A DNA stretch of 64,000 nt from Tubulanus polymorphus (GCF_964204645.1 NC_134034.1:620001-684000), one strand, 5' to 3'; counted from the stretch's first letter, positions 2,091-27,684 are shown. Made by a program: numbers and translations. The notes: a model not told the origin generated them from the letters alone.

Positions 2091-3117
2091 AAAATGTAGA
2101 TTGTCTGCTTGTCACGGATAAAAGCCTTTCTCGAGTTGTGGTTCGATATGTAAAGAAGCCATAATTTAGTCTTCCATCTGTACACCGACGCCATCTAGCG
2201 GTATAGAAATTGATATTTTCCGGAGTTGCATATATCATTCTATGAATTTTAATAAATTCAAGTATCCTCCAGTTGAACCGCTAGGTGGCGTAACGTTCTA
2301 TAGTATATATACGACAGTTTAGTACAATTAAAATTTCACGTTAAAAGGTTTACAGAAAATGAAATAAAATCATTCCGTGGTAGTCCATCAAGAATTCAGA
2401 CTTTTTCCTTTCCTTTTAAACGTATTTTGTGTCAAGTTGGAAGTATCATCTTGATTTACGTCGTTTCTGGTATCCTATTCGATTTGCCATCACGACGGGA
2501 CCGCACGACCCTTAAAAGTGCCCCGCACACTGTGCGCAGCCAGCAGGACTCGAACCCGTTTGTTACTCATCGAGTGAATGCACAGGATCCCACCTTATCC
2601 AAATGAGCCACAGGGTATTCAATATTACTATGTGTAAGTCATCATTATTTTTGGATGAGTCGTTCATCAATGGTGACTGTGGTATACACAGCGGTCTTAA
2701 TCTCGAAACAGTCAAATTGATTTACTTATATCTACTCAGTCGCCATCTATTAGAATTTTGCTGAACTACGTCATCAACCGGATTGACCCGAGCAAATATG
2801 TACGAGCGGACGGGATATTTCACACATGCGCCATCTACCAAATAAAGAATCGCAGAATAAACATTGGGTGTCATCAGCTTGGACCCCGGTGATTGTAAGT
2901 GGTTCAAATAATTACTATTATAGAGAGGGGCCCGAGATTCAAACCCGCTGATTCCGATTGGTTCATGTGATGACTATACGGTATTATAAGACCACAGGGG
3001 GGGGGGGGCATGATAAATTCAGGATACTGGTTAAAAATAGATGGGATCGGGCGCAAGATCCAGATTTACAGTGGAGAATCGAATATTCCTGACTCAACAG
3101 CATTGATCATTATAGAA

Positions 3118-3757
3118 AGAAACACAAAACACCGGTGGCGGATATCGGAGATTAGAATCTATCCAATAAGAAACACGAAACACCAGTGGCGGATATCGGA
3201 GATTAGAATCTATCCAATAAGAAACACGAAACACCAGTGGCGGATATCGGAGACTAGAATCTATCCAATAAGAAACACGAAACACCAGTGGCGGATATCG
3301 GAGATTAGAATCTATCCAATAAGAAACACGAAACACCAGTGGCGGATATCGGAGATTAGAATCTATCCAATAAGAAACACGAAACACCAGTGGCGGATAT
3401 CGGAGACTAGAATCTATCCAATAAGAAACACGAAACACCAGTGGCGGATATCGGAGATTAGAATCTATCCAATAAGAAACACGAAACACCAGTGGCGGAT
3501 ATCGGAGACTAGAATCTATCCAATAAGAAACACGAAACACCAGTGGCGGATATCGGAGATTAGAATCTATCCAATAAGAAACACGAAACACCAGTGGCGG
3601 ATATCGGAGATTAGAATCTATCCAATAAGAAACACGAAACACCAGTGGCGGATATCGGAGATTAGAATCTATCCAATAAGAAACACGAAACACCAGTGGC
3701 GGATATCGGAGACTAGAATCTATCCAATAAGAAACACGAAACACCAGTGGCGGATAT
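3118..3757. repeat. 51-bp minisatellite, about 12.5 near-identical copies
   Basis: Unit AGAAACACGAAACACCAGTGGCGGATATCGGAGA(T/C)TAGAATCTATCCAATA repeated head-to-tail with no spacers. It produces the spurious ORFs 3010-3867 and 3094-3744. Confidence 0.97.
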
Positions 3758-5229
3758 TGGACATAGTATATTCAATAACTTCTTTATATATAAAAACAAT
3801 ATATCATTCATTTCATTCAGCGATGATAAATATAAGCACTTCATTAAAACATTCTTTCCATATTTAGGGGACTATTCAAATAGTGTATGCACACGTACAA
3901 CAAGGGGAGGGAGGGTCACTTCTACTTTTATACAAGACTTGAAAATAGTATCCCTTCAGGGATGCGTAACACGTGCGCGCACTATCTGAACCGTCCCGGT
4001 CTTACATACATGGCGAAGTTTAAAATAAGAAAATTAAGACATAAACATTTCGCATCCAGTATACCACATGCAGCGGCATCTAGTGGTCACCGGCGAAAAC
4101 ACTTCAATACAACCGCTAGGCGGCGTAACGTTCGATATAATTAAATGAACTACAAGTTCTACAGTTTTTTTGGGGCTGCAGTTGATCAAAAAATGGGGAA
4201 AATTAACGATTGGAAAAATGCTATTACATGTGAATATATGACAATTTGAATTGTATTGTAACCATCATATGGCGGCGTTTTAAGCTGTTCAGCGAAATTT
4301 TGAGCAACTGCAGCTCCTTGACAACACAGTAATTGAATGGACTACATAACAATGTAACTGTAGCCAAATCCGATAAGCAATAAATTCGCTGCAAATGTTC
4401 ATTACATGATAATCTAAATAAAGTTCGTTGTATACAAAAGCTATATGCGTAAAATCTCTACAATGCATACATGCATATAGGCATATGCAACACTTAAAAA
4501 GATTTCTTGGCAGAGGTCACCTTAATCAGGGGCGAACCTGTAAATTTTACACTTATCCTCTCGGAATTGCATCTTTAAGGCTGGTTTCCATCAAAAACTT
4601 ATCTAACCCCTCACTCCGAGAAATGCCTTTACTGTTCTTCTAGATTCCATCCTTCCAATTCTCCCTAGAATCGCCCCCCTTAAACGTTACGAGTGTTTGG
4701 CGCTCGCAGTTTCATTTCCGGAAATGCTACTAACAGAATCAGTATGATATATGAGCTATGGGGGCAGGGGGCGGGGTATTTGTGAACAGCCACCACTGGG
4801 GAGATTTCTAACTAGCGTCATGGACAAGCAACTAGTACAATAATATAAATCACAATATAATTCTCACATTCATGACCATAATTTCAATTAAAATTGATTA
4901 AAATAAATAGATTTTCGAAAAAAATTCATCTGTTTCATACAGATTGCAATATAAGACATCATACAAGTACATGTAAACTCATCTGCCTATAATTTTCATA
5001 TCATGGTTTTTCATATTCTTGCACTTTAAAAACCGAAATACAAAAATGATTCATACTAATTTTGATTAAGAAGCAACACAGACAGCAGCAAATTGTGGAC
5101 CAATTTTATAAATATACCTTTGTTAAAATTGCATTATTCCCTCCCACCTCTAAAAACTTGAATAAAACATTCCAACATGATTAATTTAAATTAACTTTCA
5201 TGGACAACCAACAATATCAGTTCAACTAA

Positions 5230-6346: not shown

Positions 6347-9300
6347 CTAAACGATTGTTTGCGGTGGCAACGTTTCAAACGGTTGGACTAGTTTCTGATC
6401 CGTTGTCGGTAAAGGATTCGATCTGTAGTGTTGCACGAGGTCGATGAGTTCATTGAAAGAACATTCGTCATTCTTTAGTCTCCATTTCGACTTGTCTTGT
6501 ACGATTTCGAATGATTTTACTGGTTCCTTCTCGTCCCTGAAAACACAATTCAACAGCAGGAAAACATTTAGATATTTCACCTACGATAAGCTGCTTCTGC
6601 AGCCCCTGGACCACATTCCTTACCCCCCCCCCCCACCGGCTAAATCCAGTTTATCTTTGAGACCAATCAAATTAATGTGGTTTATGAGAATTCCGGAATT
6701 ACACCTTACAAGTTTTCACTTATTTCTAGATGAACTCTAAATGAGAGAGAGAGAGGAGAAAATGAGGGTTTAGTTCAACCCTGCTTCAGCCACGGCTATA
6801 GCCTGGATACAACCCCCCCATCCCCTCTGGTTGTCTGGTATAATACATAGTTATATATTCAACTTACTCATTCGTTTTCACGTATAACTTGTTCATTTCA
6901 TTTTCTTGATGAATAAAGAATGTACCGACTGGAGCCGGAGCTGAAGTATTCGCATCTTTCAAAATATCCAACTTTTGCGTACAGTCCGTTGTGTAATACC
7001 AGTTACGTTGGTTTTCAAACGCGTTTGGAGGAAGTGGTTCGACTCTGGAATAGAGAGAAGCACGATAATACAAAGAGTGGAATCAATTCCACCAGTTCCA
7101 CGGCGGTGCTGTGATACTGATAACTAAAACTTACCCATTTTCCTTGTCGTCCATCATGACTTTTAGTTCCGTAGGGTCTGCATTATCCTTATCCGCTTTA
7201 TCAACTCCTGCAGATATCAATTTGTAAAACATTACATTTTCTAAAAGCGACTTAATTTGTCCGATTTGAAACCAATGTACACAGGCCACAGCTCTAAGTC
7301 GTCTGATAAGTCGTCACATGACTACACGGTATAAAAAGACCATATGGGGGCCCATGATAAGGCTAAAAAAAATTGATACCTTGTTTCTCCGCTCTGCTGA
7401 GCTTAAATGTTGATCCGGCCGGCCGCCTATCTACCCTATACATTACTTTTTTTTAAATCGTGATCAATTTTACCATAATAGACCCGGCCGCTATAGAAAT
7501 AAACTGTTTATAAATTTTTATCATATTTTACAAAAATGACCCGGCCGCTGCGGAGAAACAAGGTATCATTTTTGTTTAGCCTAAATTAAGGATACTGGTT
7601 AAAAATAGATGGGACCTGACGCAAGATCCAGATTTCCAGATATTGACAATAGCTCTAAAATGATAGTAAAATTTCAACAATTTTGCTGATATGCCGCCCT
7701 AAATTAAGAATATATGCCCTTTTTATTGGTCGACATGGTCACAACATGGCCCTGGATCCGCCCCTGCTCTAAGTCATTTGATAAGTCGTCACATGACCAA
7801 AGTCATCTCTATTTTTGAGTCCCAATTTGTCCGAAGTGTAAGTCATCCTTTGGATAAGTCGTCACCTTTTACTGAAACTGTCTGTATTTTTAAGTTCCTA
7901 TTTGTATTTGCAATTGATTTTAATAATTAAGACGAAAATTAGCCGGATCTTTATAAATACAGATAACGATGCTCTGTGTAATTGTTATATTTACCACCAG
8001 CTGGCGCTGCTTCATCAGCAGATGAACCTTTTTTCCAACACGGCCACAAAGCAACAAATCGCGTTCTCCAATTAGCGCCTGTAAGATTATTAGTGAACGT
8101 ATTTAACTGAAGGAAATTATCGCCTCAGTTCATCAAACGATGGTTGAATTAATTCCATTTACCAGTAGAGGGAGCTGTTTTACAACACGACAACCATTTC
8201 CAATCAATAAAGTGTGTCCAGCATGTCCCATCTGTATGTAAACGCAAACAGTGCATAGATATTCATCGAAAATAACAATCATTTCCAGTTCCACAATCTC
8301 TAATTTACAACTGTGGAACTAAATCCTGAGTTCACAGTTAACTCTAACTCAAGAACTGGATCCTGAGTTCACAGTTAACTCTAACTCATAACTGTAGAAC
8401 TGGATCCCGAGTTCACAGTTAACTCTAACTCACAACTGTGGAACTGGATCCTGAATTTAGAGTTAACTCTTACCTCACAATTGTTAAACTGGATCCTGAG
8501 TTCACAGTAAACTCTTACTAACAACTGTGGAACTGGATCCTGAGTTCACAGTTAACTCTAACTCACACCATTGAACTGGATCCAGAGTTCACAGTTAACT
8601 CTAACTCATAACTGTAGAACTGGATCCTGAGTTCCCAGTTAACTCTAACTCACAAATGTGGAACTGGATTCTGAGTTCACAGTTAACTCTAACTCACAAC
8701 TGTGGAACTGGTTACAGATAACTGACACATAACAGTAATCAATTCACGGTCTGCAGATACTCACAAGTTGGTTTAGAGTTAGCTGGTGGACAAATACCAT
8801 TGTTACCATGCGCATGATATCCATCCACCAGTAATAACAATGATCAACTTTCTAGAGACCGCGGACCCTGTATATAAATACTGATTTAGTACTCACCTTC
8901 TTGCGATCTGTGATATGTTAGAAATCTATAAACGAGGAATGCTAACACGATTATCAATATCACTAAGAAGAGTATACCTATCACTAGACCAGCAGACAAC
9001 CCAGCTAAAAATACAAATACAACCTACAGTATCACACCTGAGTCTAACTGAGTTTCAGAGAAAACAACAGACAAGAGTTTGAATCATATTTACCTGTGCT
9101 CGGGGATGGAATCACATCACCTAAAATGGAAAAATACATTCAAATTTATTGTCAGAAAATTAAATCTGCACAACTGTTACTGGATCCAGTGTGGAACTGT
9201 GGATCATAACTGTGGAACTGGATTCAGAGTCAAATTATACCCGCACAACCGTGGAACTGGGTCCAGAGTCGAATTAAACCCACACAACTGTGGAACTGAA

Positions 9301-11978
9301 TCCAGAGTCGAATAAAACCCACACAACTGTGGAACTGGATCTAAAGACAAATCAAACCCACACAACTGTGAAACTGGACTTGAAGTCAAATTGAACCCAC
9401 ACAACTGTGGAACTGAATCCAGAGTAAAATTGAACCCACACAACTGTGGAACTGGATTCAGGGTCAAATTGAACCCACACAACTGTGGAACTGGATTCAG
9501 GGTCAAATTAAACCCACACAACTGTGGAACTGGGTCCAGAGTCGAATTGAACCCACACAACTGTGGAACTGGGTCCAGAGTCGAATTGAACCCACACAAG
9601 CGCGGAACTGGATCCAGTGTAGAACTGTGGATCACGACTTACCAGAACCGAAGAATTGAAATGTTATCTGTTTGGAACGTTGAGTAGATATGAATGATTT
9701 TCCGATGTTTGCTCCAGTTTCACATTTCACTGGAATCTCTCCGTTAAAATCTGAACCGTTCAAATACACGGTGCTGGAAGTTTTATATCTGGGGAAACCG
9801 TTTACATCCGGTGAACAAGATGAGCTCAAGGCAGACGCATCAGTGTATTCTACATGCTGTGAAAATCAATAGATATTTTTTTCATACATTTACAGGTGGT
9901 ATGTGGTAGGCACTAAAGTAGTTGCTTGTACATGTAGTGGTTTTTAATAAATTCGTCGGTTCAGGTGCCAACTATCGTCCAGCTTGTGGCGCCATCTCTG
10001 CGAGTAGCCAATTATGAGTTTGACAGCTGTGATTTAGATCAGTGTCATTCTCTAGTTTTTCATCGGCCTAATCGGACGATGATCTGCTGAATAAACTATA
10101 TATTTATCAACTAAATATATTTTCTCTTTATTTATCGCAGTCGGTGAGTGACCGCATCGTCAGTCGTTGTATCAAGACAGAACCAAATGACTGACACAGT
10201 TTAAAGAGGAGTCAGCTATCACAGGAATCCTTCCACCAATTTTCCATCGCGGTGGAACGACCTTTTAAAGTATTTTCCATTTAGAAGCAGTTTTGAAGAA
10301 ATCAATTAATCGTAGGGAATCTGAACGTATAAACTATAAATAACTCCACTGACCTTGACGAACCATCTGATATACGGTTGTGTATTCGAGCAGACGGTGT
10401 CGCACGTTACTTCAACTGTTCCATTCTCGTAAACCATCGCTCCGTTCTTCATCGACGCGTCCATCGTTACCGACGCGACCGGATCAACAATCGTAACCGC
10501 GACGACGATACTGTCCGCGTTGACGTTCATATGAAAATGAGGCCGTCCGTCGTTGAACCACGTGTCGGTTTTCAGAGTAAGATTCATCCAACCGCGACGT
10601 CTTCCGGCCGCCCACGCCGACTCCGAGCGTAGAGACCGCGAACACGACACTCCGAACACTCTCGTGTCCATTTTGAATTTATCGAATGCGTACGCGGGAA
10701 ACGCTTCGCATTCGTTATTAAAACGCAGAGTGTCCGGCGATGAGTCCGGCCGACGTTTATAGTCAACCACCTGCCACATGAATGTCCTCGGGAATTCTTT
10801 GACTCCGGGTAGAGCTTCGATCAGTCCCGACAGAGTGAACGTTTCATTGCGTATAACCGTTCGATTGTCGCTAGGATACGCCTTCAGTTTGAACTCTTTC
10901 GGTTCCAAGGCTTAAAAACGAACAAACGCACGAAAATAACAAACGCACGAAAATAACATCGAGGCTCATCATGGAATCCTAGTGAATCAACCTAAACTTT
11001 ACCCTATCCTTAGCTCTAAAACAGACCCTAAACCTAACTCTCTGGTCCCGGTTCCACAGTTCTGAGTTAGAGTTAAATCTGAGTTAAAGTTAGTTCATTT
11101 TCAATTAGTTAACTCAGAGTTAAATCTCAACTCAGAACTGTGGAACTGGACCCTGGTCCTTAAAGGCTACCTAGACCCTAACTCCACCGAAACCCTTACC
11201 CTATAGGCCACAGGGGCTCAACACCGTTTTTAAAGGTGGTACCAAGGATACTGGGTCAAATCTTTGATTTTGGACCCCCGGCTATAGTGACGAGCCCCTG
11301 TGTGTAGGCCTACTATGGAATGAAATAGTTTCTTTTTATATTTTATAAGTATGTAAGCAAATAGCATTTACTGAAATAATGGGGCATCGCAAAATATCAA
11401 CTTTCTTTTTTAAACTTAAAAATATCGCAGTGGATATTATACGGCTGAGTGTTTATATCCGCTATTTTACTCAACATCGCCGCTGATTGGCTGATTTACG
11501 CCGCGCATGCGCACACAGAGGTGCGCGACTTAGAAAATTCAAGGAAACTGTGGAGAACAGAGTTAGAGAAAATAGAGCGGATCGAGCGAGACTCAAACCC
11601 GGGCCAGTAAGTTACTAGCGCAGCATCATACCACTAGACCACCGAGCTCGCTGAAAACCAACCGAATGTTTTTAACTACATATAGCCTCACCTAACCCTT
11701 ATCCTTGAAACGGAACCCTCTGGACCCTCTTCTCACCCTTTCGACACTAAACCCTATCGAAACCCTAAAACCCAATATAATGATTTCATTGTTACTTATA
11801 TGGTAAAATAGCGGAAGTAAATACTTTGCCTATAGGTTAAATATCACCTTCGTAAAAATATTGACAATGACATTTATTAGATTGGATTTGATCATGTTGT
11901 TTGTCACTTACGAGTCACTCGCACAAACAATGACAACAACACCACAATACTGCTGCTGAAATACTTCTTGATAAACAT
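6347..11978 (-). CDS. Type I membrane protein: signal peptide, 2 Ig-like domains, TM helix, cytoplasmic degenerate SH2 domain (498 aa, 9 coding exons)
   Basis: Exons 11978-11912 (MFIKKYFSSSIVVLLSLFVRVTP, signal peptide), 10910-10354, 9856-9643, 9120-9094, 9004-8897 (GLSAGLVIGILFLVILIIVLAFLVYR, TM), 8078-7995, 7207-7135, 7044-6868 and 6536-6347. All introns are GT-AG with matching phases (1,0,1,1,1,1,2,2), total 1497 nt with no internal stop. C2-type Ig signature VTC..SN.QP.IRW...T.S.V.L....NG...VKC. SH2 signatures WY, GTFFI, VKSFEI and F.ELIDLVQHY...PL....L..P. Confidence 0.88.
7361..7581. mobile_element. PIF/Harbinger-type (Tourist-like) MITE, 221 bp
   Basis: TIRs GGCTAAA..TTGATACCTTGTTTCTCCGC and GCGGAGAAACAAGGTATCA..TTTAGCC, flanked by a TAA duplication (7358-7360 and 7582-7584). 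A paralogous empty site CATGATAAATTCAGGATACTGG is present near 3009-3030. Confidence 0.85.
8307..8711. repeat. Intronic minisatellite, about 44-bp unit, about 9-10 copies
   Basis: Unit AACTGTGGAACTGGATCCTGAGTTCACAGTTAACTCTAACTCAC. It shares the ACAACTGTGGAACTGGATC core with the 39-bp arrays. Confidence 0.9.
9170..9632. repeat. Intronic 39-bp minisatellite, about 12 copies (dispersed family)
   Basis: Unit CACAACTGTGGAACTGGATTCAGRGTCAAATTRAACCCA. The same family occurs in reverse orientation at about 13585-13860, 32505-32700 and 52960-53020. Confidence 0.9.
11430..11846. mobile_element. Inverted-repeat element containing a tRNA-derived segment
   Basis: Imperfect terminal inverted repeats (GTGGATATT..TCCGCTATTTTAC and GTAAAATAGCGGA..AATATCAC). 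The minus strand at 11583-11649 carries an A box (TGGTCTAGTGG) and a degenerate B box (GGGTTTGAGTC). Confidence 0.5.
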
Positions 11979-12146: not shown

Positions 12147-13097
12147 CTTCATTCGATAAATATCCTACTAAATACAATATTCGGGCGTAAAATCATATGT
12201 TTAAAAGCCCCGAAATGGAGCGAACACCCGTTGAACCGGCGAGCCCGTATCAACCCAGTAGTGTTCAGCGGAAGCTTAATAGAACTGGGTGGGGAAATGG
12301 GGAAAACCCGTAAATCCCCACCAATCAAACGCCGACTCAATCATAGACTGGTTACCGGTTTCTATCTTCAACCATATTGAATGGGACAGGCAACCAGTCT
12401 AAATACGAATGCAGGTGGCGCAAAATACGACAGGCAACCAGTCTACAACTATTTTCAATTTATTTGTTTTTCTGATTTACTATTATTATTAGGCTAGGCA
12501 TATATTTCAATACAATTCGAAATTTAATCAAAATTTCGATTTTAATTTCTCATAGACATGACGAGTCTTCGATCCCAACCTAGACATCTTCTTGAGTAGG
12601 TGAGGTATCACAGCTACTCAAAACGGTTAACGTGGGATTCGAACCGCATTATGAACCCAACCAAGCCTCGGCACTCAGTACTACTATATGATATAGAGCG
12701 TTCCCATGGTTAATATTTGATATCGAATTAGCTTTAGAGCGTTTGATCTTCACTTCACTGTTGCCCACACTGTAATTACGATTTATGAATTTAATCAGCC
12801 GACGAATGCGCCATCTTCAGGATAGCGTACGCAACAGTTTATCGACGCGGCTATTATTGATTTCTTGCGCGGGAACTCGCACAGCGGACACACATCAGCA
12901 ACACACACACACACTGCACAAACCACGCATAATAAATTCATCTAATGTGATACATCATTATTTAGCCGCCATCTTGTTTTCTGGTTGTCTTGTAGAACAT
13001 TCCTGACTGGAGACTCGAGCTTTTTCAGCGAGAATCCTTCAATTCGCGTTCGGAAAATAGGATCTGAGTTCGTGCATGGATGTCGAGCAGATAAAAC
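12147..13097. promoter_or_regulatory. Putative bidirectional promoter and 5'-UTR exons of the Ig-TM-SH2 gene and the ankyrin/SOCS-box gene
   Basis: Minus-strand donor AAG|GTAATT at 12146 and plus-strand donor AAC|GTGAGT at 13098, with matching acceptors at 11979 and 13903. CCAAT near 12321 and an exact YY1-type motif GCCGCCATCTTG at 12965-12976. Confidence 0.5.
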
Positions 13098-13860: not shown

Positions 13861-13951
13861 GATACCCGGTGCTAAATTAGATAATATCGATTTCTCTTTC
13901 TAGTCGTACTAACAGTAAGTGGACAGGTGTACATTGAGCCATCGCTGTACA

Positions 13952-15289
13952 ATGATGAATAATCTACCAGACTGCCGCATGTTGGCCTCGAGCCTTCATC
14001 ACAACAATAACAATCACCTGTTAATGGGAAACGGAAGTGCCAGCTCGGTTGCCTTGGTATTCTACGACGCTATTATCAACAATGAACTGGACACGTTACG
14101 TAAAGTGGTCGAGATTTACAAAATCGACGTAAACGCTAGATTTACGGAGGTCCGTAAACCGAATCACGTCGATCTATGCCCGGTTCACCTGGTCGCCTAT
14201 AAAGGCTACGGGTCTATGTTGCAGTACTTAATCGATTATAAATGTGACGTCACGACAACGACACAAAATTTGAAACGTCAGGCGATCCACTACGCGGCCA
14301 TGGGGCACCAGATGGGCTGTTTGAGGAAACTGCTAAAAGCCCACGCCCAAATGAACTCGAAAGATACGTTTGGTAATTCGCCGTGTCATTACGCGGCCGA
14401 GGACGGGAACTGCGATATCATACGCGAATTACTGGCGCAAGGAGCAGAAGTCGACTCGCAGGACATCACCTGGAAAACACCTCTGATGAAAGCGACGCGG
14501 AACGGTAAAGCGCGCGTGTCTGAGCTGTTACTGAAAGCCGGATGTGACGTCAACATCCGCGACGAATACCTGAACACGGCGCTGCATTTCGCGGCGCGCT
14601 GCGGATCGCTCGAAATCCTCAACAAACTTCTGAAAGCGGGCGCTAAAATCAACGTGCAAAATCACTGGGGTTTGACCCCGTTGATGGAGGCCGTCTGCTA
14701 CAACCAGAAAGCCGTCGTCGGTAAACTGATCGACGAAAAATGCGACCTCTATCGGCGCGAAACGAAAACGGGTGATACGGCTTTGCATATCGCAGTGAAG
14801 AAGAACTATTGCGTAATTTCGGATATGTTGCTAAAAGCCGGTGAGTGGATTCCGTACGTCTATAACTACAACCGTGAATCTCTGCTTCACGACGCCGTCA
14901 TCTACAATCGCCTGGACATTATTCGACTTTTCGTCTATCGGAATTTCGACATCGAAATACCGTGTAAGATCTACCCGGACGGTCGTCGCAAGCATATTGT
15001 ACAGCTGTCGCTGGAGAAGGGTAACATCGAAATATGCAAAATCATCTCTGACGTCACGTGTAGTTCGTGCACGTCGCACGATGACGTCACGCAAGGTCGC
15101 GTACTCGGTAGCCAATCGTCGATGTCGGATTTGACGACGGTGAAGTCGTTGCGTAAGTGGAGCCGTCGAGCGATTCGGCGCTCGCTCGGTTTCGATATCG
15201 AGGATAAGATTAACAATCTACCGGTTCCGCAGGCGATGAAGGATTATATCACATGTCGCGATCTGAACGTTCATCACTGTCTACTGTAA
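13952..15289 (+). CDS. Ankyrin repeat and SOCS box-containing protein (ASB-like), 445 aa, single coding exon
   Basis: About 10 ankyrin repeats (TPLMKA, TALHFAA, TPLMEA, TALHIA). C-terminal SOCS box VKSLRKWSRRAIRRSL...INNLPVPQAMKDYI. First in-frame ATG at 13952 follows a splice acceptor at 13903 and an in-frame TAA. AATAAA signals near 15581 and 15764. Confidence 0.92.
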   Translation: MMNNLPDCRMLASSLHHNNNNHLLMGNGSASSVALVFYDAIINNELDTLRKVVEIYKIDVNARFTEVRKPNHVDLCPVHLVAYKGYGSMLQYLIDYKCDVTTTTQNLKRQAIHYAAMGHQMGCLRKLLKAHAQMNSKDTFGNSPCHYAAEDGNCDIIRELLAQGAEVDSQDITWKTPLMKATRNGKARVSELLLKAGCDVNIRDEYLNTALHFAARCGSLEILNKLLKAGAKINVQNHWGLTPLMEAVCYNQKAVVGKLIDEKCDLYRRETKTGDTALHIAVKKNYCVISDMLLKAGEWIPYVYNYNRESLLHDAVIYNRLDIIRLFVYRNFDIEIPCKIYPDGRRKHIVQLSLEKGNIEICKIISDVTCSSCTSHDDVTQGRVLGSQSSMSDLTTVKSLRKWSRRAIRRSLGFDIEDKINNLPVPQAMKDYITCRDLNVHHCLL

Positions 15290-21399: not shown

Positions 21400-24300
21400 C
21401 TATCGACGACGTTTGTATTTTGCTTGAATGGATTTCAAATCGATCGTCAGTATAGTGTAGAGAATAGGATTGAGGGACGAGTTGATCGGCAAGAAAAGAA
21501 CCGCCAGCCAAGCCGCCACCTGATTCGGTATTTCTACCCGAAATACCGCGCAAAACTGAACAGTGATTATCGGTAGCCAACAAAATAAATTTGAAAGATT
21601 TATCACCAAACTCCTGCGTGCCAAAATCAGTTCAGTAGGATCAATTCTACCCGAGCCGGACCTGCTTCCAGATACGTATCTGTACATCTGCGCATAAGTC
21701 ACCATTATCGTAACAAGTATTGCCGAGTTGGACACGGCAAAAATAGCCAGAGAATATTGCCAGGCGTCGACATCATTGGTCAGTAAATTCATCGGTAAAC
21801 AAACTCCGGTTGTGCCATAGAAATTCGGACCGAAGTACGGCAATTGTGAAAGTGGTAACAGAGAAATCGTACCCAAAATGAGCCAGCAAATACAGCAAAT
21901 ACTGGTGATGAGTCTAGGGGATACAAAAAAACTGTCAGAAAATAGATCGATGATGTTCGAGTATCGATGACGTGTTAGAATAAGCAAGAATGTTAACGAG
22001 CCTTCACAGGAAATGGTTACTAAAATCCCGGCAACGCGACACAATGAACTGCTCGTCCACATTTCAGAATTTAAGAAATAAATGCCTTTGTAAACGTAAT
22101 CAGCTCCTGCTATAAAGAATAGATAAATCGACATCAGGAAATCACAAGCAGCGAGATTCATGATGAGGATATCAGAAGATCTGTTGCGCGTTTCGGATGA
22201 TGGTAGTTGAATGCGCAGTAAAATTACAACGCTGTTGGCGAAGAAACTGAACGCAGCGATGACCCAGATTATAGCTCTGAGGACCGAGTTACCCATCAGG
22301 TCAGAACAGGAGGAAAATTGATCAGCTTCAGGAAGGCAGTTATCAACATTTGGAGCCATGCAGCAAAATTTGTAAGCATCAGACCTTAGGGTCTCTAACG
22401 ATGTCAGGTTGTTGAAAGCGCTTGCTTCTGTAGAAATGAACTTTGAATTATTAGCCAAATCGAGATGTAACAGTTGGCCTAAACTGGAGAAAGCATATTT
22501 TGATATACGGTTGATTCTATTGCTGCTGATATTCAATGAAGTCATTGAGGAAAGACCTTCGAATATATTTGCACCAAGTTCCGAAATGTGCATTCCATGA
22601 AGATCAAACAGTGGAAGTGAATCTAAACCACGAAAGCATCCTTCCTCCATATAGCGAATTGGATTTCCGGTCATGAATAGTTTCTTTAAAGCGCCCAAGC
22701 CATAAAATATATCCGCAGATAAGGATGTTATGTTATTATATGTAAGGTCTAAGGTGTGAAGGTTATGCAGGTGTGAGAACGAATTGGGTACAACGTGCGA
22801 TATTCCATTGGAGGAGATGTTGAGAATACGAAGGTAAACGAATGAAGAAAACGTCGACACATTGAAAATAATTCTGTTATTCGACAACATTAGAATTCGA
22901 CTTGATATCGTGAAGAGGCCACTTATACCGGTGAGACCAACATTTCTACAGTAAACAGAATGACCTTGACACTCACAACGGCTAGGACACGTGACGTTAC
23001 AGAAAGCCTCGTCGTCAGTGGTACTTTTACAATTTACAACACCGTCACAAACTTCAGATTGTGGAATACATCGATTTTCATGGCCACATTTAAACATCCC
23101 CGGACATGAAAATGACTCGCAATTTTGCTCATCTTCTGAATTGGGACAATCTGATTGACCATCGCACACCTGTCTGATCGGTATACAGTACGATGCTGGA
23201 CATTTTACAGTACCAGCTGGACATTCAAATTCTTCACATTTTGATAAGTGCTCGAGATTTCTACAAACGAAGTAACCATTTGTTATCCTTTCAAGAATAC
23301 ATCTGTGACGTCTTGAATAACAATGGGGAGAATCAAAAGAACATCTTTGTTCAACGGATTCTCTGCACAGATTAGTGAAGTTAGTCGTACAGTGGTTCTC
23401 ATTATTGCACTGAATCGTAGGATCCACTGTAACATCAGTATTGTCTACTAATTCGTCTTCTTCAAGGCTCCCTTTGCAATCCACGACACCATCCTGATAC
23501 AACTGAGAACTGATACAGTCTCCATTGTTACACAGAAACCCCTGACACAGTTGAGAGGTGCATCCCATTTCATCGGAGCCATCAATACAACCAGTGACTC
23601 CGTCACATCTTTTAGACCTACCCACACATTGACCATTCTCACAACGAAATTGGTCGGAAAAACATGGGAGATGAAAACACGAGTTCTCATCAGAACCGTC
23701 CAGACAATCTTGAACGAAATCACAGAAACCACTGATTGATATAATCTGACCATCAGAGCAGTGAAACCTGCTGTATAAATTCATATCCGTACAATTGAGT
23801 TCATCTTCACCATGTTGACAGTCGTTTCTGGTATCACATACGCGATGGTTGCTGATACATCTTTGATCGTTACATTCAAACTGCCACGATTTACAACCGC
23901 TTATAGAAGCCAACTCTTCACCAGTGTAGGAACACAATACAGAATGCAGAATTACGTCTTCAGCGGTGACGTCGCTCGTATTAGAAGACCAAACCAGTGA
24001 ATGAATATACGTGATTTCATCCCTGGTTAGTGTTGGCCGTATTGCTCTAAATCTGGTCATTCCATCAATTACTAACACGGCGCCATATTGGTGCTGATAG
24101 TTAAACGTAGTGATTAAGTTACTAACTACTGTGTCCGTCAAAGAAGTAATCGTGCCTATTTCGCAACGGATGTCACGGCACATCTCGGTCGCTGTTTTTA
24201 TATCTAAACCTCGATGGTTGTTCCAGTCTGTCAGTATTTGATAACATCGCCCGGCTACACCTATCCAACCTCGAGTACAGGTTGAGTTGACAGCAAGTAC

Positions 24301-27300
24301 GTCTAGCATTGTATTTATTTTTGTTTCATTTGCAATCGTAGTAGGGCTATTTTCCTGCTTATTATATCGATCCGATTCGCAAACAAAGGTCGTATGGACC
24401 TCTTCGATTAAACACGGGAATCGAACCCAGTTCGCCGATCCTCGTGGATTATTCAGTATCATCGCCGTACACGGCATATTGGCGTCATTTATTGGTTGCG
24501 TTCTAAGAGGAGATATCAATCCTTGAATAACTTCCGGTATAGTTTCGTTACTCGTCGGTTTATACCACTCTGTGTAGCTCAATGGTTTACCGTCACTCCA
24601 CGCATAGTCACCAGTAGTATTCGCCTGTAAAAAACGAACTAAAGCATAGAGGTCAATCAGTATATACGTCTCCACAAGGAGGGGGTAAAATGCATACCAG
24701 TCTTGGCCTCCATCGATTGGAAAAACACTTCGAAAATTTGATTTACCTTCAGTTTTAATCCAATCATCATTATGAGCACTTTTTGTGAATACCCCTCTTG
24801 CAGAAGTTTCGTAGCGAATAATCTTTTAATGGAAATCATTTCTTGTTCTGAGTTGATACTGAGCAGGTGTCCTGTGTACTTCTGTTTACAGTACAATTCA
24901 GCGTTCTCCCAATTCAGACGTTCGTGTTTGATATATTTGACACAAGAAAAGTAACCAGAATCATAGAACCCCGGTTTACATTGAGTATCTTTGGTCGTCG
25001 ATGCTTTTTCTAAAGTATATTGTATTTGGAATTTAGGGACTCGTTGTTTTAACACGAATGAGATGTATTTATCCGTAAGACTGTGGAATACGCTACCGAT
25101 TAATTGATGGTTCGTTGTGCAGATCATCAGATCGGGTTGTTGAAAATTACCAATTGCTTGAATGAAAATGACCGGATCTTTTTCCAATAGAGATGTTTTT
25201 AAGCACGGCGTGTTTTCCATGTATTTTATCACGAATCTGTAATATTTGTGGTCCTCGACACGAGACCCAATCCCTATCGTCAGGGCCTCAAAACTATAGG
25301 TTTGTGGCCGCATCAACATGTCTGTGACTCCCGGATAGTTCGGCGACTGCACTAAGCCACATTCATCTTTTTCCTTGAACATAATTCCGATATGAAATGC
25401 CGAAGGCTTTTTCAAACGTTGACATTTACGACGTAGTTCAACTATAAGTGGATGTTGCCAGAAACCGTGGTCTCTTTTTAAAGTCACGGTGTTTAATACG
25501 AAACCGTTATTGGTGAACTGACTCTTTAAACCCAGGTACCTGCTGCACAGCGTCGTCGGTTGTCGATCGCAACGACCAACTTGATATTCGTGTTTTGACA
25601 ATATTTTAAAGTTCTCGAAGGTCAAGCGTCGGTTCTTAGGTGTAATGACGACACAGTTTGACGTCATATTAATCAGACGTTCTCCCTCTTGCAGTATGTA
25701 CCCCGTACAGTCCGTCAGTTGAAATCGCAGTTCAGTGTTACTTCCCAGTAGTCCGTCCCATTTGTAAGCGTACGCTACTATTGTAACCGCACCACCTGCT
25801 GAAATCAGACTGACGACGTTACGGTCGTATCTATTGGAACTAGGACAATACGGTCCGTAGCGTGTAGCCACCGTCAAATTACCCCCATCGTAGATGTAAA
25901 ATCCGGCTCGCTCGCAGTTCTCCGATAGAATCAACATTCTCATTCCATTATCGTGAATATCGACTTTCGATGTGAATTCTATTTTAAACACTTGGTACTC
26001 AATCGTCGGTTTGTTTCTCGTTGGGAAATATTGGAAAGGTGAGAAACCTGTCGTAAACTGCAGAGAAAAACGATAAAACTCGTGAGATACTCGTATAATC
26101 ATGTTCGATGATAATATTTCTAAAATCGTATTAGTTTACTTACTTGCCACGTTGTCAATTGAACATCTGCCGTCGAAAGCGATTTTATCTTAAAGTATAT
26201 TTTCATTTGAGACTTGGTCAATAGTTCGTCTTTTAATAAAACGCAAATAATGACAAGAAAGCCCTCTGATTCTACGCTAAGCGATTCCAGGTAGTTGTTA
26301 CCGAGTAAAATATCAATTCCTACAATACGTAACCCTTCCATCTTAAAGACACCGATGACATTTTTCGAAGTGACGAGATCTCCAGTCCAGTTGAAGACGA
26401 CGTACTGTAACACCTGCACGGTGATGGACCAGCAGTGTAAGCGTTTTGTTCCTGTTATTACGTGTAAACTGTTGTCGTCTTCGGAAATAAGCACTCCCGA
26501 TTCGTTATTAGAAATCTGAATCAACGGATTAGTCACGTTCCAATCTGATATTTTGTAAATTTGCACTAGTAATTGCGCATGAAATTGGAAATTTTCGTAC
26601 AACAAACCTGCGATTGCGGCCTTGTTGGTTTTTGAATAAAATGTCACCGATGGTAGTCCAGTTTGTGCAGGTATATTGCCAATAGGTGCGCTGCTGGTGT
26701 TCCAACCGTCATATACTCTAACTGAAGCCGTCTCAAAAATGCGGAAAATCTTGAAGCTAACAGCTATAAATGTCAGATTCAGAGCGAAATAATCCGTAAG
26801 TCCAACCCACTCTAAATAGAGATAACACTGTAAATTGCTAATAGCAAATTTGTACCCAATCGATGTTTGTAACTTGCCTAATCTAAGATGATGTCTCCTT
26901 CTACAATTGTTACTTAGATTCAAATGACTTCGTTCATAACGATACGTGATATAAACTCGACTACCCCGCGCACTATCGACGTTACTCCTAAACATCATCG
27001 AGATCGAATCGTTACGGCGGATTTCTCGTCCTCCGTAACCGCAGAGTCTACTATCGGACTCGCCGACGAGAAGGTAGTTATCGCTACAGAATATTGACGG
27101 CTCGATTTCGTAGTATAATTCGACGTTAAAAGTTCCCCCGGGTGAAGAACCGTTGACGAACCAACGACATTCAACACCACGCGTTAACGACGGATAATTC
27201 GGTGAAACGATGTAACCGGACGTAGAATCGACTGGGTACCAAGTGTTGTTACAAGACGAACTGGCCGTCACGGAATCGGACCGATCAGCGTGAACCATCT

Positions 27301-27364
27301 GAACTCGCCAGACGATCAGCGACGCTGTGAACAGCGCACATAAATAATCCATACCGAACAACAT
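21400..27364 (-). CDS. GRL101-like (type C LGR) GPCR with CUB, C-type lectin-like, about 7 LDLa, LRR and 7TM domains; 1918 aa, 3 exons
   Basis: Exons 27364-26144, 26057-24747 and 24624-21400, joined by phase-0 GT-AG introns of 86 and 122 nt (5757 nt). Signal peptide; CUB (SGYIVSPNYP..C.W...CSDNYL...LCG); CTLD split by intron 2 (W.NAELYC..GHLLSINS.QE..IGL / Y.WSDG...Y..W); LDLa repeats (CD...DC.DGSDE); LRRNT CPSRCEC plus LRRs; hinge CC....C.P..DQFSSC.DL; TM7 NSSLNPILY. Confidence 0.93.
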
Positions 27365-27684
27365 ATACACGACCGAATGAACTCACATCATTAAAATTTT
27401 AGATCGGATTACTTTTCGTCAGTCGTAGCTTCACACTTATCACAGTTCATCCAATTAGGGAAATTTTCATGAAATGGATATTTTTCTTCGCTGCTGTAAT
27501 TATTTCTGAAATAGGACATGTATAAACATATATTTCAGAACTTATTTTATATATACCTTTGAAAATATATGAACACGTTGAATCCATAACCGTAATATTA
27601 TGAAAACTAATAATTGCACTACAGAATGGTTGGGATTTGAGTTTGTGGCATTAAAGCCATGTTGGAAATACGCTGACTTATCTA

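What the first reader, a model, noticed from the sequence alone, without database searches (positions are those of the whole stretch)
6347..11978. Hidden Ig-domain cell-surface receptor with its own cytoplasmic SH2 domain
Seen: nine exons splice in frame into signal peptide, V-like Ig, C2-like Ig, Ser/Pro stalk, single TM helix, linker and SH2 domain, ending -QTIV. The signal, TM and micro-exons are absent from the ORF track. Established: bilaterian SH2 domains almost always occur in soluble adaptors and enzymes, and TM-plus-SH2 architectures are best known from choanoflagellates. Inference: this is a receptor with a built-in adaptor module, possibly from an undescribed invertebrate recognition or adhesion receptor family.
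Basis: partly seen in the sequence, partly recalled or inferred. Interest (0 to 1): 0.85.

Follow-up and report, generated by a model that had tools for sequence, protein, structure and literature searches.

The report
Ribbon-worm Ig receptor with atypical SH2
A ribbon-worm gene encodes a single-pass cell-surface protein with antibody-like outer domains and, unusually for an animal receptor, its own SH2-type docking domain inside the cell, but that domain has lost the residues that normally grip phosphotyrosine.

Summary
The spliced gene is real. It lies on the minus strand of a Tubulanus polymorphus (nemertean) chromosome and is already in RefSeq as uncharacterized protein XP_074659130.1 (LOC141911924, 523 aa). 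Every exon translation from the window occurs letter for letter in that protein. It missed a 69-nt in-frame exon (8231-8163) and a 6-nt coding start (12152-12147), so the product is 523 aa, not 498. Spliced contigs of one public run reproduce five introns exactly. The junction from the missed exon to the next one (84-nt intron), which links the TM half to the SH2 half, was not displayed.

The C-terminal domain is a true SH2 fold. Support comes from a PDB sequence hit (PLC-gamma-1, E 1e-4), the ESM Atlas model (TM 0.62-0.71 to SH2 clusters), an AlphaFold model with canonical SH2 topology whose 50 best structural matches are all SH2, and an intron at the same codon and phase as in three canonical SH2 genes of this genome. 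It is atypical: the FLVR arginine is His447 and other phosphate-binding positions are lost.

The second outer domain is a C2-set Ig. The first is only probably Ig-like. No relatives turned up elsewhere; one weak ectodomain paralogue has no detected SH2. It is a new variant of known kinds, and the function is inferred.

The parts
12147..12152 (-). Coding end of the first exon: start codon ATG plus AAG (residues M1, K2), followed by a GTAATT donor. The 5' UTR extends upstream.
   Evidence: Pattern found. It explains the 'MK' prefix of P0001. The X2 contig of 1178 nt has about 201 nt upstream of exon 10910, i.e. 67 nt of the next exon plus about 134 nt.
11912..11978 (-). Exon encoding the signal-peptide-like N-terminus (basic start, hydrophobic core). 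Phase 1 at its 3' end.
   Evidence: Translation found at P0001 residue 3. Splice sites. Hydrophobic window of 1.63 at residues 3-8.
10354..10910 (-). 557-nt exon encoding Ig-like domain 1 (V-like, lacking the canonical Cys pair) and the first half of Ig domain 2 (Cys194, Trp207).
   Evidence: Exact match to P0001 residues 26-210. Joined to the next exon in X2 contig record 13. Language-model features point to Ig clusters, 0.89-0.92. The paralogue on C6 carries the canonical Cys pair.
9643..9856 (-). Exon encoding the second half of Ig domain 2 (C2-set; Cys255 in a D-x-x-G-x-x-x-x-x-C motif) and the start of the stalk.
   Evidence: Exact match to P0001 from residue 211. BLASTP E 2e-7 to a domain on C3 that scores above the Pfam C2-set_2 cut-off.
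9094..9120 (-). 27-nt micro-exon (phase 1-1) encoding the Ser/Pro stalk.
   Evidence: Translation found in P0001 at residue 283. Canonical splice sites. Implied by the length of the first 204-206 nt of X2 contig record 13.
8897..9004 (-). 108-nt exon (phase 1-1) encoding the transmembrane helix and the basic stop-transfer segment.
   Evidence: Kyte-Doolittle 19-residue mean 3.64 at residue 297. The donor at 8897 is used in the X2 joint 8897->8231.
8163..8231 (-). It encodes a Trp/Cys-rich juxtamembrane segment with a Cys-Cys pair (Cys342, Cys343).
   Evidence: Spliced joint 'skips 665' in X2. Present in P0001 at residue 328.
7995..8078 (-). 84-nt exon (phase 1-1) encoding a second Trp/Cys-rich segment and the start of the acidic linker.
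   Evidence: P0001 residue 351. Joint 7995->7207, 'skips 787', in X2. One nonsynonymous variant, A351T, at 8076.
7135..7207 (-). 73-nt exon encoding the acidic linker.
   Evidence: P0001 residue 379. Joints on both sides in one X2 contig, 'skips 787' and 'skips 90'.
6868..7044 (-). Exon encoding the N-terminal half of the SH2 domain (betaA, alphaA, betaB with F-F-I-H in place of F-L-V-R, betaC). It ends in phase 2.
   Evidence: Full-domain alignment to the PLC-gamma-1 C-SH2. AF2 secondary structure. The intron position and phase are identical to three canonical SH2 genes of this genome. Two synonymous variants.
6347..6536 (-). Last coding exon: C-terminal half of the SH2 domain (betaD to betaG, alphaB), a tail ending -Q-T-I-V (class I PDZ-ligand pattern), and the stop codon at 6347-6349.
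   Evidence: Pfam SH2_1 E 0.0017, below the cut-off. 54 of 55 weak PDB hits are SH2 domains. Joint 6868->6536, 'skips 331', in X2.

Best explanation
One expressed gene of the nemertean Tubulanus polymorphus (LOC141911924) encodes a 523-aa type I membrane glycoprotein. From the N-terminus it has a signal peptide, a V-like Ig-like domain without the canonical disulfide, a C2-set Ig domain, a short Ser/Pro stalk and one TM helix. Inside the cell it has two Trp/Cys-rich juxtamembrane segments (likely palmitoylated and membrane-hugging), an acidic linker, an SH2-fold domain, and a C-terminal -T-I-V that fits a class I PDZ ligand.

Shown: the exon structure, most junctions, the TM helix, the SH2 fold, and the loss of the FLVR arginine (His447).

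Inferred: it acts as a two-Ig adhesion or recognition receptor, resembling JAM/CAR-type or SLAM-type receptors in layout. Its SH2-like domain is a permanently membrane-tethered docking module. It probably binds a partner without needing phosphotyrosine, or only weakly through it, much as the His-bearing TYK2/JAK SH2 domains hold receptor tails through an acidic residue. The PDZ ligand would anchor the complex to a cortical scaffold.

The fusion most likely arose by exon shuffling of a canonical SH2 gene onto an Ig receptor, and it looks lineage-restricted.
For: Gene model:
- All exon translations are identical to XP_074659130.1.
- All 10 introns are GT..AG and the frame is open for 523 codons.
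- Spliced X2 contigs give introns of 497, 665, 787, 90 and 331 nt exactly.

Topology:
- There is one strong TM window, and all five N-X-S/T sequons of the outer part lie N-terminal to it.

SH2:
- phmmer against PDB: PLC-gamma-1 tandem SH2, E 9.9e-5, with a full-domain alignment.
- The ESM Atlas's own model of residues 405-520 matches ten SH2 clusters at TM 0.62-0.71.
- The AF2 model built with an alignment has the order betaA-alphaA-betaB-betaC-betaD-betaE-alphaB-betaG.
- The 50 best Foldseek matches and the 50 best exhaustive VIA matches are all SH2 (Z up to 7.8, rmsd 2.8 A over 91 residues).
- The phase-2 intron lies 19 residues after the Gly of G-x-F, exactly as in Grb2-like and PLC-gamma-like SH2 genes of the same genome.

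Degenerate pocket:
- His at the FLVR position in HMMER, hhalign and MAFFT alignments.
- In humans only RIN2 and TYK2 (His) and SH2D5 (Trp) lack this Arg, and JAK-family SH2 domains bind receptor tails without pTyr (PMC7530234).

Ig domain 2:
- BLASTP E 2e-7 to a bona fide C2-set_2 domain.

Constraint:
- Exonic variants among the runs are 3 synonymous to 1 nonsynonymous, and there is none in the 557-nt ectodomain exon of the X1 contig.
Against: - The junction 8163->8078, which links the TM half to the SH2 half, was not among the joints displayed. The Ig/TM contig has lower word depth (135) than the SH2 contigs (281-340).
- Pfam scores are below the curated cut-offs: SH2_1 17.6 bits against 27, SH2 12.6 against 21.
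- hhalign to SH2 profiles is weak: P 0.004 and 0.12.
- The good AF2 model used an alignment of SH2 domains and is only pLDDT 62. Without an alignment it was 43.
- Domain 1 has no Pfam or PDB support.
- No homologue exists for testing conservation.
- Palmitoylation, the PDZ ligand and phospho-independent binding are pattern-based inferences.
Confidence: 0.55

Rival explanations
1. One reading: the SH2 domain is a working phosphotyrosine reader. The receptor would then carry its own adaptor and dock directly onto tyrosine-phosphorylated partners or kinases after ligand engagement.
For: The SH2 fold and the peptide-binding scaffold are kept. Lys468 and His447 could still contact a phosphate. p120RasGAP C-SH2, one of the best structural matches, binds pTyr without using its FLVR Arg (PMC7530234).
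Against: The FLVR Arg is His. The alphaA2 Arg is absent (Thr424). Glu stands at betaB7 and betaD6, and Ser at betaD4, so the pocket is neutral to acidic. SH2 domains without the FLVR Arg are described as unable to bind pTyr through this residue.
Confidence: 0.2
2. The Ig/TM part and the SH2 part are separate transcription units or mutually exclusive isoforms, and the 523-aa model is a chimeric prediction.
For: The 8163->8078 joint is not in the displayed table, and contig word depth differs about twofold between the halves. Retaining the 84-nt intron would bring an in-frame stop, giving a tail-less receptor (read from the sequence).
Against: The same strand, compatible phase 1-1 exons and an 84-nt intron with good sites. 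Exon 8231-8163 must splice onwards, and exon 8078-7995 has no upstream in-frame start of its own. RefSeq joins them. The joints table also omits junctions that are demonstrably present in contig record 13, so absence from it says little.
Confidence: 0.07
3. The C-terminal domain only resembles SH2 by chance or convergence and belongs to another alpha/beta fold.
For: All profile scores are below the curated thresholds. The Pfam SH2 model does not find the locus in a six-frame genome search at E <= 10. The confident AF2 model was guided by SH2 sequences.
Against: The ESM Atlas model, made without my alignment, also matches only SH2 proteins. PDB phmmer gives E 1e-4 over the whole domain. Even the poor single-sequence model ranks Grb2 SH2 first. 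The intron position and phase are shared with canonical SH2 genes.
Confidence: 0.08
4. It is a young, lineage-specific exon-shuffling product whose SH2 module is decaying and has no specific role. The protein works simply as an Ig adhesion molecule with a long tail.
For: No homologues anywhere. The key pocket residues are lost. The only paralogue shows no SH2.
Against: The frame is open through all SH2 exons. Both variants seen in the SH2 exon are synonymous. The core hydrophobic and alphaB motifs are kept. The SH2 exons are expressed at least as well as the rest.
Confidence: 0.1

Closest known systems
SH2 domains lacking the FLVR arginine (TYK2 and RIN2 with His; JAK-family SH2-like domains)
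   Same: SH2 fold with His at betaB5. The best Pfam model is SH2_1 (PF21990). JAK1 and JAK2 FERM-SH2 structures are among the structural matches. The expected mode is phospho-independent, constitutive tail binding (PMC7530234).
   Different: JAK SH2 domains are embedded in a soluble FERM-SH2-kinase protein. Here the domain stands alone at the end of a transmembrane receptor. No sequence relationship closer than to other SH2 domains was found.
PLC-gamma-1 C-terminal SH2 and Grb2-type SH2 domains
   Same: Best sequence match (E 1e-4). Identical intron position and phase in the Tubulanus Grb2-like and PLC-gamma-like genes.
   Different: These are cytosolic proteins with an intact pTyr pocket. Identity is only about 20%.
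Two-Ig (V + C2) junctional adhesion receptors of the CTX/JAM/CAR type
   Same: Signal peptide, membrane-distal V-like domain plus membrane-proximal C2 Ig domain, single TM helix, juxtamembrane Cys pair, C-terminal class I PDZ-ligand pattern (compare CAR's -SIV). This comparison rests on my own knowledge of these families.
   Different: No detectable sequence homology. Those receptors have no folded cytoplasmic domain, and domain 1 here lacks the canonical disulfide.
SLAM-family receptors plus the single-SH2 adaptors SAP/EAT-2
   Same: V + C2 ectodomain with a signalling unit that is a lone SH2 domain. SH2D1B-type clusters are among the language-model neighbours. In concept it is receptor and adaptor in one chain.
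   Different: In SLAM signalling the SH2 is a separate protein that binds T-x-Y-x-x-V/I motifs in the tail. This tail has no such motif (Tyr positions), and the SH2 lacks the Arg that SAP keeps.
Transmembrane adaptor proteins (LAT, PAG, NTAL)
   Same: Membrane-anchored signalling scaffolds with juxtamembrane cysteines.
   Different: They have tiny ectodomains and many tyrosine motifs that are read by SH2 domains.

Membership tests
SH2 domain superfamily (Pfam PF00017 / PF21990) | Profile match above the curated cut-off | tested here: not met
   SH2_1 scores 17.6 bits against a cut-off of 27 (E 0.005). SH2 scores 12.6 bits against 21 (E 0.15). The genome-wide six-frame PF00017 scan does not report the locus.
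SH2 domain superfamily (Pfam PF00017 / PF21990) | Fold: central antiparallel sheet flanked by alphaA and alphaB, in the order betaA-alphaA-betaB-betaC-betaD-(E,F)-alphaB-betaG | tested here: met
   AF2 secondary-structure order. The 50 best Foldseek and the 50 best VIA matches are all SH2. The ESM Atlas model scores TM 0.62-0.71 to SH2 clusters. Caveat: the AF2 alignment consisted of SH2 sequences.
SH2 domain superfamily (Pfam PF00017 / PF21990) | Significant sequence similarity to solved SH2 domains | tested here: met
   PLC-gamma-1 tandem SH2, E 9.9e-5, with the alignment spanning betaA to alphaB.
SH2 domain superfamily (Pfam PF00017 / PF21990) | Invariant FLVR arginine (betaB5) and alphaA2 arginine that bind the phosphate | tested here: not met
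   His447 and Thr424 in three alignment methods. This makes it an atypical member, as with TYK2 and RIN2, rather than excluding it (PMC7530234).
SH2 domain superfamily (Pfam PF00017 / PF21990) | Shared gene structure with canonical SH2 genes (supporting, not defining) | tested here: met
   Phase-2 intron after the 19th residue from the G-x-F glycine, as in loci L025, L026 and L045.
SH2 domain superfamily (Pfam PF00017 / PF21990) | Binding of phosphotyrosine peptides | not testable with these tools
   Needs purified protein and peptide arrays.
Immunoglobulin superfamily, C2-set (domain 2, residues about 170-285) | Cys (B strand), Trp (C strand) and D-x-G-x-x-x-C (F strand) triad, plus similarity to recognised Ig domains | tested here: met
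   Cys194, Trp207 and Cys255 are present. BLASTP E 2e-7 to a C3 domain that scores 34.2 bits against the 21-bit C2-set_2 cut-off. The direct Pfam hit is only C2-set_3, E 0.13.
Immunoglobulin superfamily, V-like (domain 1, residues about 28-165) | Ig sequence profile or fold, and the canonical disulfide | tested here: inconclusive
   No Pfam or PDB hit. Ser and Met stand where the paralogue has the B- and F-strand Cys. The paralogue gives Ig_3 at E 0.042. Language-model neighbours are all Ig clusters at 0.89-0.92, but recognition is below the tool's reliability mark.
CTX/JAM/CAR junctional Ig receptors | Sequence homology of the ectodomain | tested here: not met
   No hits in 1.84 billion representatives or in PDB.
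CTX/JAM/CAR junctional Ig receptors | C-terminal PDZ-binding motif | tested here: met
   The end -Q-T-I-V fits S/T-X-hydrophobic-COOH. This is a pattern only; binding was not tested.
SLAM-family receptors | Cytoplasmic T-x-Y-x-x-V/I switch motifs | tested here: not met
   The only non-SH2 cytoplasmic Tyr is Tyr321, next to the membrane, and it is not in that context.

The most novel reading that the evidence does not exclude
A bilaterian cell-surface Ig receptor has captured an SH2 domain by exon shuffling and uses it as a permanently membrane-tethered, phospho-independent docking module. This would be a receptor architecture not described in Metazoa, and a natural experiment in how 'reader' domains are repurposed once their phosphotyrosine pocket is lost.
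Probability: 0.4. Interest if true: 0.7.

Novelty: new variant of a known kind. Interest (0 to 1): 0.55.

Why it matters
To my knowledge, SH2 domains in animals sit in soluble enzymes and adaptors that are recruited to receptors. A receptor that carries the SH2 fold itself breaks that division of labour. It also adds a rare natural case of an SH2 domain without the FLVR arginine; among human proteins only RIN2, TYK2 and SH2D5 lack it (PMC7530234).

If the domain proves functional, it gives a simple system for asking what an SH2 scaffold does when it cannot read phosphotyrosine, and how exon shuffling builds new receptor types in a little-studied phylum.

If it turns out to be a decaying, species-specific fusion, it is a minor curiosity.

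Tried and rejected
- RNA evidence: no run on record as RNA holds the stretch. Run X2 behaves like RNA (spliced contigs), but the single read-laying run did not list the 8163->8078 joint.
- Single-sequence AlphaFold of residues 395-523 failed (pLDDT 43), and its Foldseek hits were weak, though SH2 came first.
- Exon-wise Pfam found no Ig domain and only a sub-threshold SH2.
- Exon 8 alone gave a weak chance hit to L,D-transpeptidases. I rejected it once the whole domain aligned to SH2.
- hhalign against a six-sequence Tubulanus SH2 profile and a SOCS-dominated profile was weak. The third homologue search returned mostly SOCS proteins, which is a poor diversity base.
- The second hit of the representative search (P0002, 1137 aa, nine repeated 50-aa stretches) is a repetitive acidic protein, and I set it aside as compositional.
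- A profile of domain 1 plus its paralogue found nothing in PDB.
- I could not resolve the tail of the C6 paralogue: no clear TM exon and no SH2 similarity within about 17 kb.
- The look-up of encoding contigs had no record of the protein.
- Earlier notes of the scan held nothing on this place.
Exons were searched by reference, and the whole protein only through the public record P0001, which is identical to them. In scripts exons were concatenated only to check frame, variant effects and intron phase.

Full report
WHAT IS THERE

The window is G000:C10:620001-684000 of a 268-Mb, 77-contig genome. A HMMER pass over 1.84 billion representative proteins with the longest exon (window 10354-10908, minus strand) returned a 523-aa protein, P0001. 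P0001 is NCBI XP_074659130.1, 'uncharacterized protein LOC141911924 [Tubulanus polymorphus]', from a palaeonemertean ribbon worm. Every exon translation I derived from the window occurs letter for letter in P0001. So the gene in the window is that RefSeq model, and P0001 served as a legitimate reference for the whole protein. No typed or concatenated spliced model was sent to any search tool.

GENE STRUCTURE

The coding sequence lies on the minus strand in 11 pieces:
- 12152-12147 (ATG AAG)
- 11978-11912
- 10910-10354
- 9856-9643
- 9120-9094
- 9004-8897
- 8231-8163
- 8078-7995
- 7207-7135
- 7044-6868
- 6536-6347 (includes the stop)

All ten introns are GT..AG, and the frame is open for 523 codons. 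It also missed the six coding bases of the first exon.

No run is on record as RNA. However, run X2 holds spliced contigs:
- A 1178-nt contig joins 10910-10354 directly to 9856-9643.
- The roughly 204 nt of that contig ahead of this join match the summed length of the 27-, 108- and 69-nt exons.
- Joints 'skips 665' (8897->8231), 'skips 787' (7995->7207), 'skips 90' (7135->7044) and 'skips 331' (6868->6536) match my introns to the base.

The 84-nt intron between 8163 and 8078 links the TM half to the SH2 half, and it was not in the displayed part of the joints table. That table also omits junctions that the long contig certainly contains, so this absence says little. The link therefore rests on phase compatibility, on the lack of any other partner for either exon, and on the RefSeq model. 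I put a split-gene reading at about 7%.

THE C-TERMINAL DOMAIN

Exon by exon the signal is weak. Pfam SH2_1 gives E 0.0017 on the last exon. 54 of 55 weak PDB hits of that exon are SH2 domains. The preceding exon alone finds nothing meaningful.

With residues 395-523 of P0001 the picture is clearer:
- phmmer against PDB gives PLC-gamma-1 tandem SH2 at E 9.9e-5, with an alignment from betaA through alphaB.
- The ESM Atlas holds its own model of this protein. Residues about 405-520 of it match ten different SH2-containing clusters at TM 0.62-0.71.
- AlphaFold without an alignment failed (pLDDT 43).
- With 41 SH2 sequences as alignment it gave pLDDT 62 and the canonical element order.
- Its 50 best Foldseek hits and its 50 best hits in an exhaustive VIA comparison are all SH2 domains (best Z 7.8, rmsd 2.8 A over 91 residues). 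That model is biased by its alignment. The Atlas model is not.

Gene structure gives an independent argument. The intron splitting this domain is in phase 2, and it falls after the 19th residue counted from the glycine of the G-x-F-[LF]-[VI]-[RH] strand. Two Grb2-like genes and a PLC-gamma-like SH2 gene of the same genome have the same position and phase. I take the SH2 fold and its descent from canonical SH2 genes as about 90% likely. This is despite Pfam scores below the gathering cut-offs and weak hhalign values.

THE POCKET

All alignments put F-F-I-H on F-L-V-R, so the invariant betaB5 arginine is His447. By the same alignments alphaA2 is Thr424, betaB7 is Glu449, betaD4 is Ser469 and betaD6 is Glu471; the betaD positions are uncertain by one residue. 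In humans only RIN2 and TYK2 (His) and SH2D5 (Trp) lack this arginine. JAK-family SH2 domains bind receptor tails through an acidic residue, without phosphotyrosine (PMC7530234). I rate it at about 20%.

THE REST OF THE PROTEIN

- One very strong hydrophobic window (residues about 291-316) follows a Ser/Pro micro-exon. A weaker N-terminal hydrophobic core follows a basic start.
- All five sequons of the outer part lie before the TM helix.
- Domain 2 has Cys194, Trp207 and Cys255 in a D-x-x-G...C context. It aligns at BLASTP E 2e-7 with a domain on C3 that scores above the Pfam C2-set_2 cut-off.
- Domain 1 (about 135 residues) has no Pfam or PDB support. Its only relative is a paralogue on C6 (27.7% identity), which keeps the canonical B- and F-strand cysteines where this protein has Ser and Met. 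Language-model neighbours are all Ig clusters. I call it probably Ig-like, not shown.
- The cytoplasmic juxtamembrane part holds four cysteines, including a Cys-Cys pair, and many tryptophans in two similar 1-1 exons. An acidic linker follows.
- The chain ends in T-I-V, the class I PDZ-ligand pattern.
- The only tyrosine outside the SH2 domain in the tail is next to the membrane.

CONTEXT AND RELATIVES

- No homologue of the ectodomain exists among 1.84 billion representatives, apart from a repetitive and probably spurious hit.
- Word-seeded searches with the whole protein and with the SH2 part found only the protein itself.
- In its own genome the SH2 exons have no paralogue.
- The C6 paralogue shows no SH2 similarity within about 17 kb, and the Pfam SH2 scan has no hit near it.
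- The neighbours in the window are unrelated: an ankyrin-repeat SOCS-box gene and an LGR-type GPCR.
- Variants among the four runs are 3 synonymous to 1 nonsynonymous in exons, and there is none in the large ectodomain exon of the X1 contig. There is no sign of the hypervariability expected of an allorecognition locus, and there is a small hint of constraint.

HOW IT MOST LIKELY WORKS

Shown: a single-pass, glycosylatable Ig-type surface protein with a tethered SH2 fold that lacks the phosphate-binding arginines.

Inferred: an adhesion or recognition receptor laid out like JAM/CAR or SLAM receptors. It would be held close to the inner leaflet by acylated cysteines and tryptophans. Its SH2-like domain would dock a partner constitutively and largely independently of phosphorylation, and its C-terminus would bind a PDZ scaffold. 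The symmetric phase-1 exons and the shared SH2 intron point to assembly by exon shuffling.

NOVELTY

I found no paper describing a natural animal receptor with an intrinsic SH2 domain. To my own knowledge none of the roughly 110 human SH2 proteins is an integral membrane receptor. On the other hand, the gene model is already public, both domain types are well known, the SH2 is degenerate, and so far it is one gene in one species. I rate it a new variant of known kinds, with interest 0.55.

Noticed in passing
window 8353-8711 and 9208-9617: Two tandem arrays (44-bp unit x 8.2 copies; 39-bp unit x 10.5 copies) sit inside introns of the gene. Both share a core 'AACTGTGGAACTGGATCC'. In the public runs these stretches have k-mer depths of 10^4 to 10^5, so they belong to a very abundant genome-wide repeat family. 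Related copies at 11047-11234 lie in the opposite orientation ('opposite strands' joints).
   Followed up: partly
window 7287-7850: A very high-copy element (word depth about 150,000 in X1 and X2) lies in the 787-nt intron. It has short internal repeats around 'GACCCGGCCGC' and looks like a MITE-type insertion.
   Followed up: no
window 11450-11650: A high-copy stretch whose minus strand reads like a tRNA-derived SINE head (GGTGGTCTAGTGGTATGATGC...). ARAGORN calls no tRNA there.
   Followed up: partly
window 13919-15289 (+): A single 456-aa open frame with ankyrin repeats and a C-terminal SOCS box: an ASB-type ubiquitin-ligase adaptor, apparently intronless.
   Followed up: no
window 21400-24675 (-), with further long frames at 24657-27370: A 1091-aa open frame with four LDL-receptor class A modules, leucine-rich repeats and a rhodopsin-type 7TM domain: an LGR-type GPCR. 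The two adjoining long frames have no Pfam hit.
   Followed up: no
L016 2537-4449 (G000:C6:2238536-2240448, +): The only paralogue of the ectodomain. It has the same split between exons, the canonical Ig cysteine pair is kept in domain 1, and I found no SH2 or clear TM exon downstream.
   Followed up: partly
L018 6426-6725 and 9104-9585 (G000:C3, around 22.91 Mb, -): An array of CD80-like C2-set Ig domains (Pfam C2-set_2, E 2.6e-8 and 6.9e-7). They are weakly similar to domain 2 of this receptor and probably belong to a large multi-Ig adhesion gene.
   Followed up: no
window 3010-3867 (+): A 285-aa frame with low-complexity matches (TCAD3, LT-IIB) with zero significant stretches. This is most likely a repeat artefact, not a toxin gene.
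   Followed up: no
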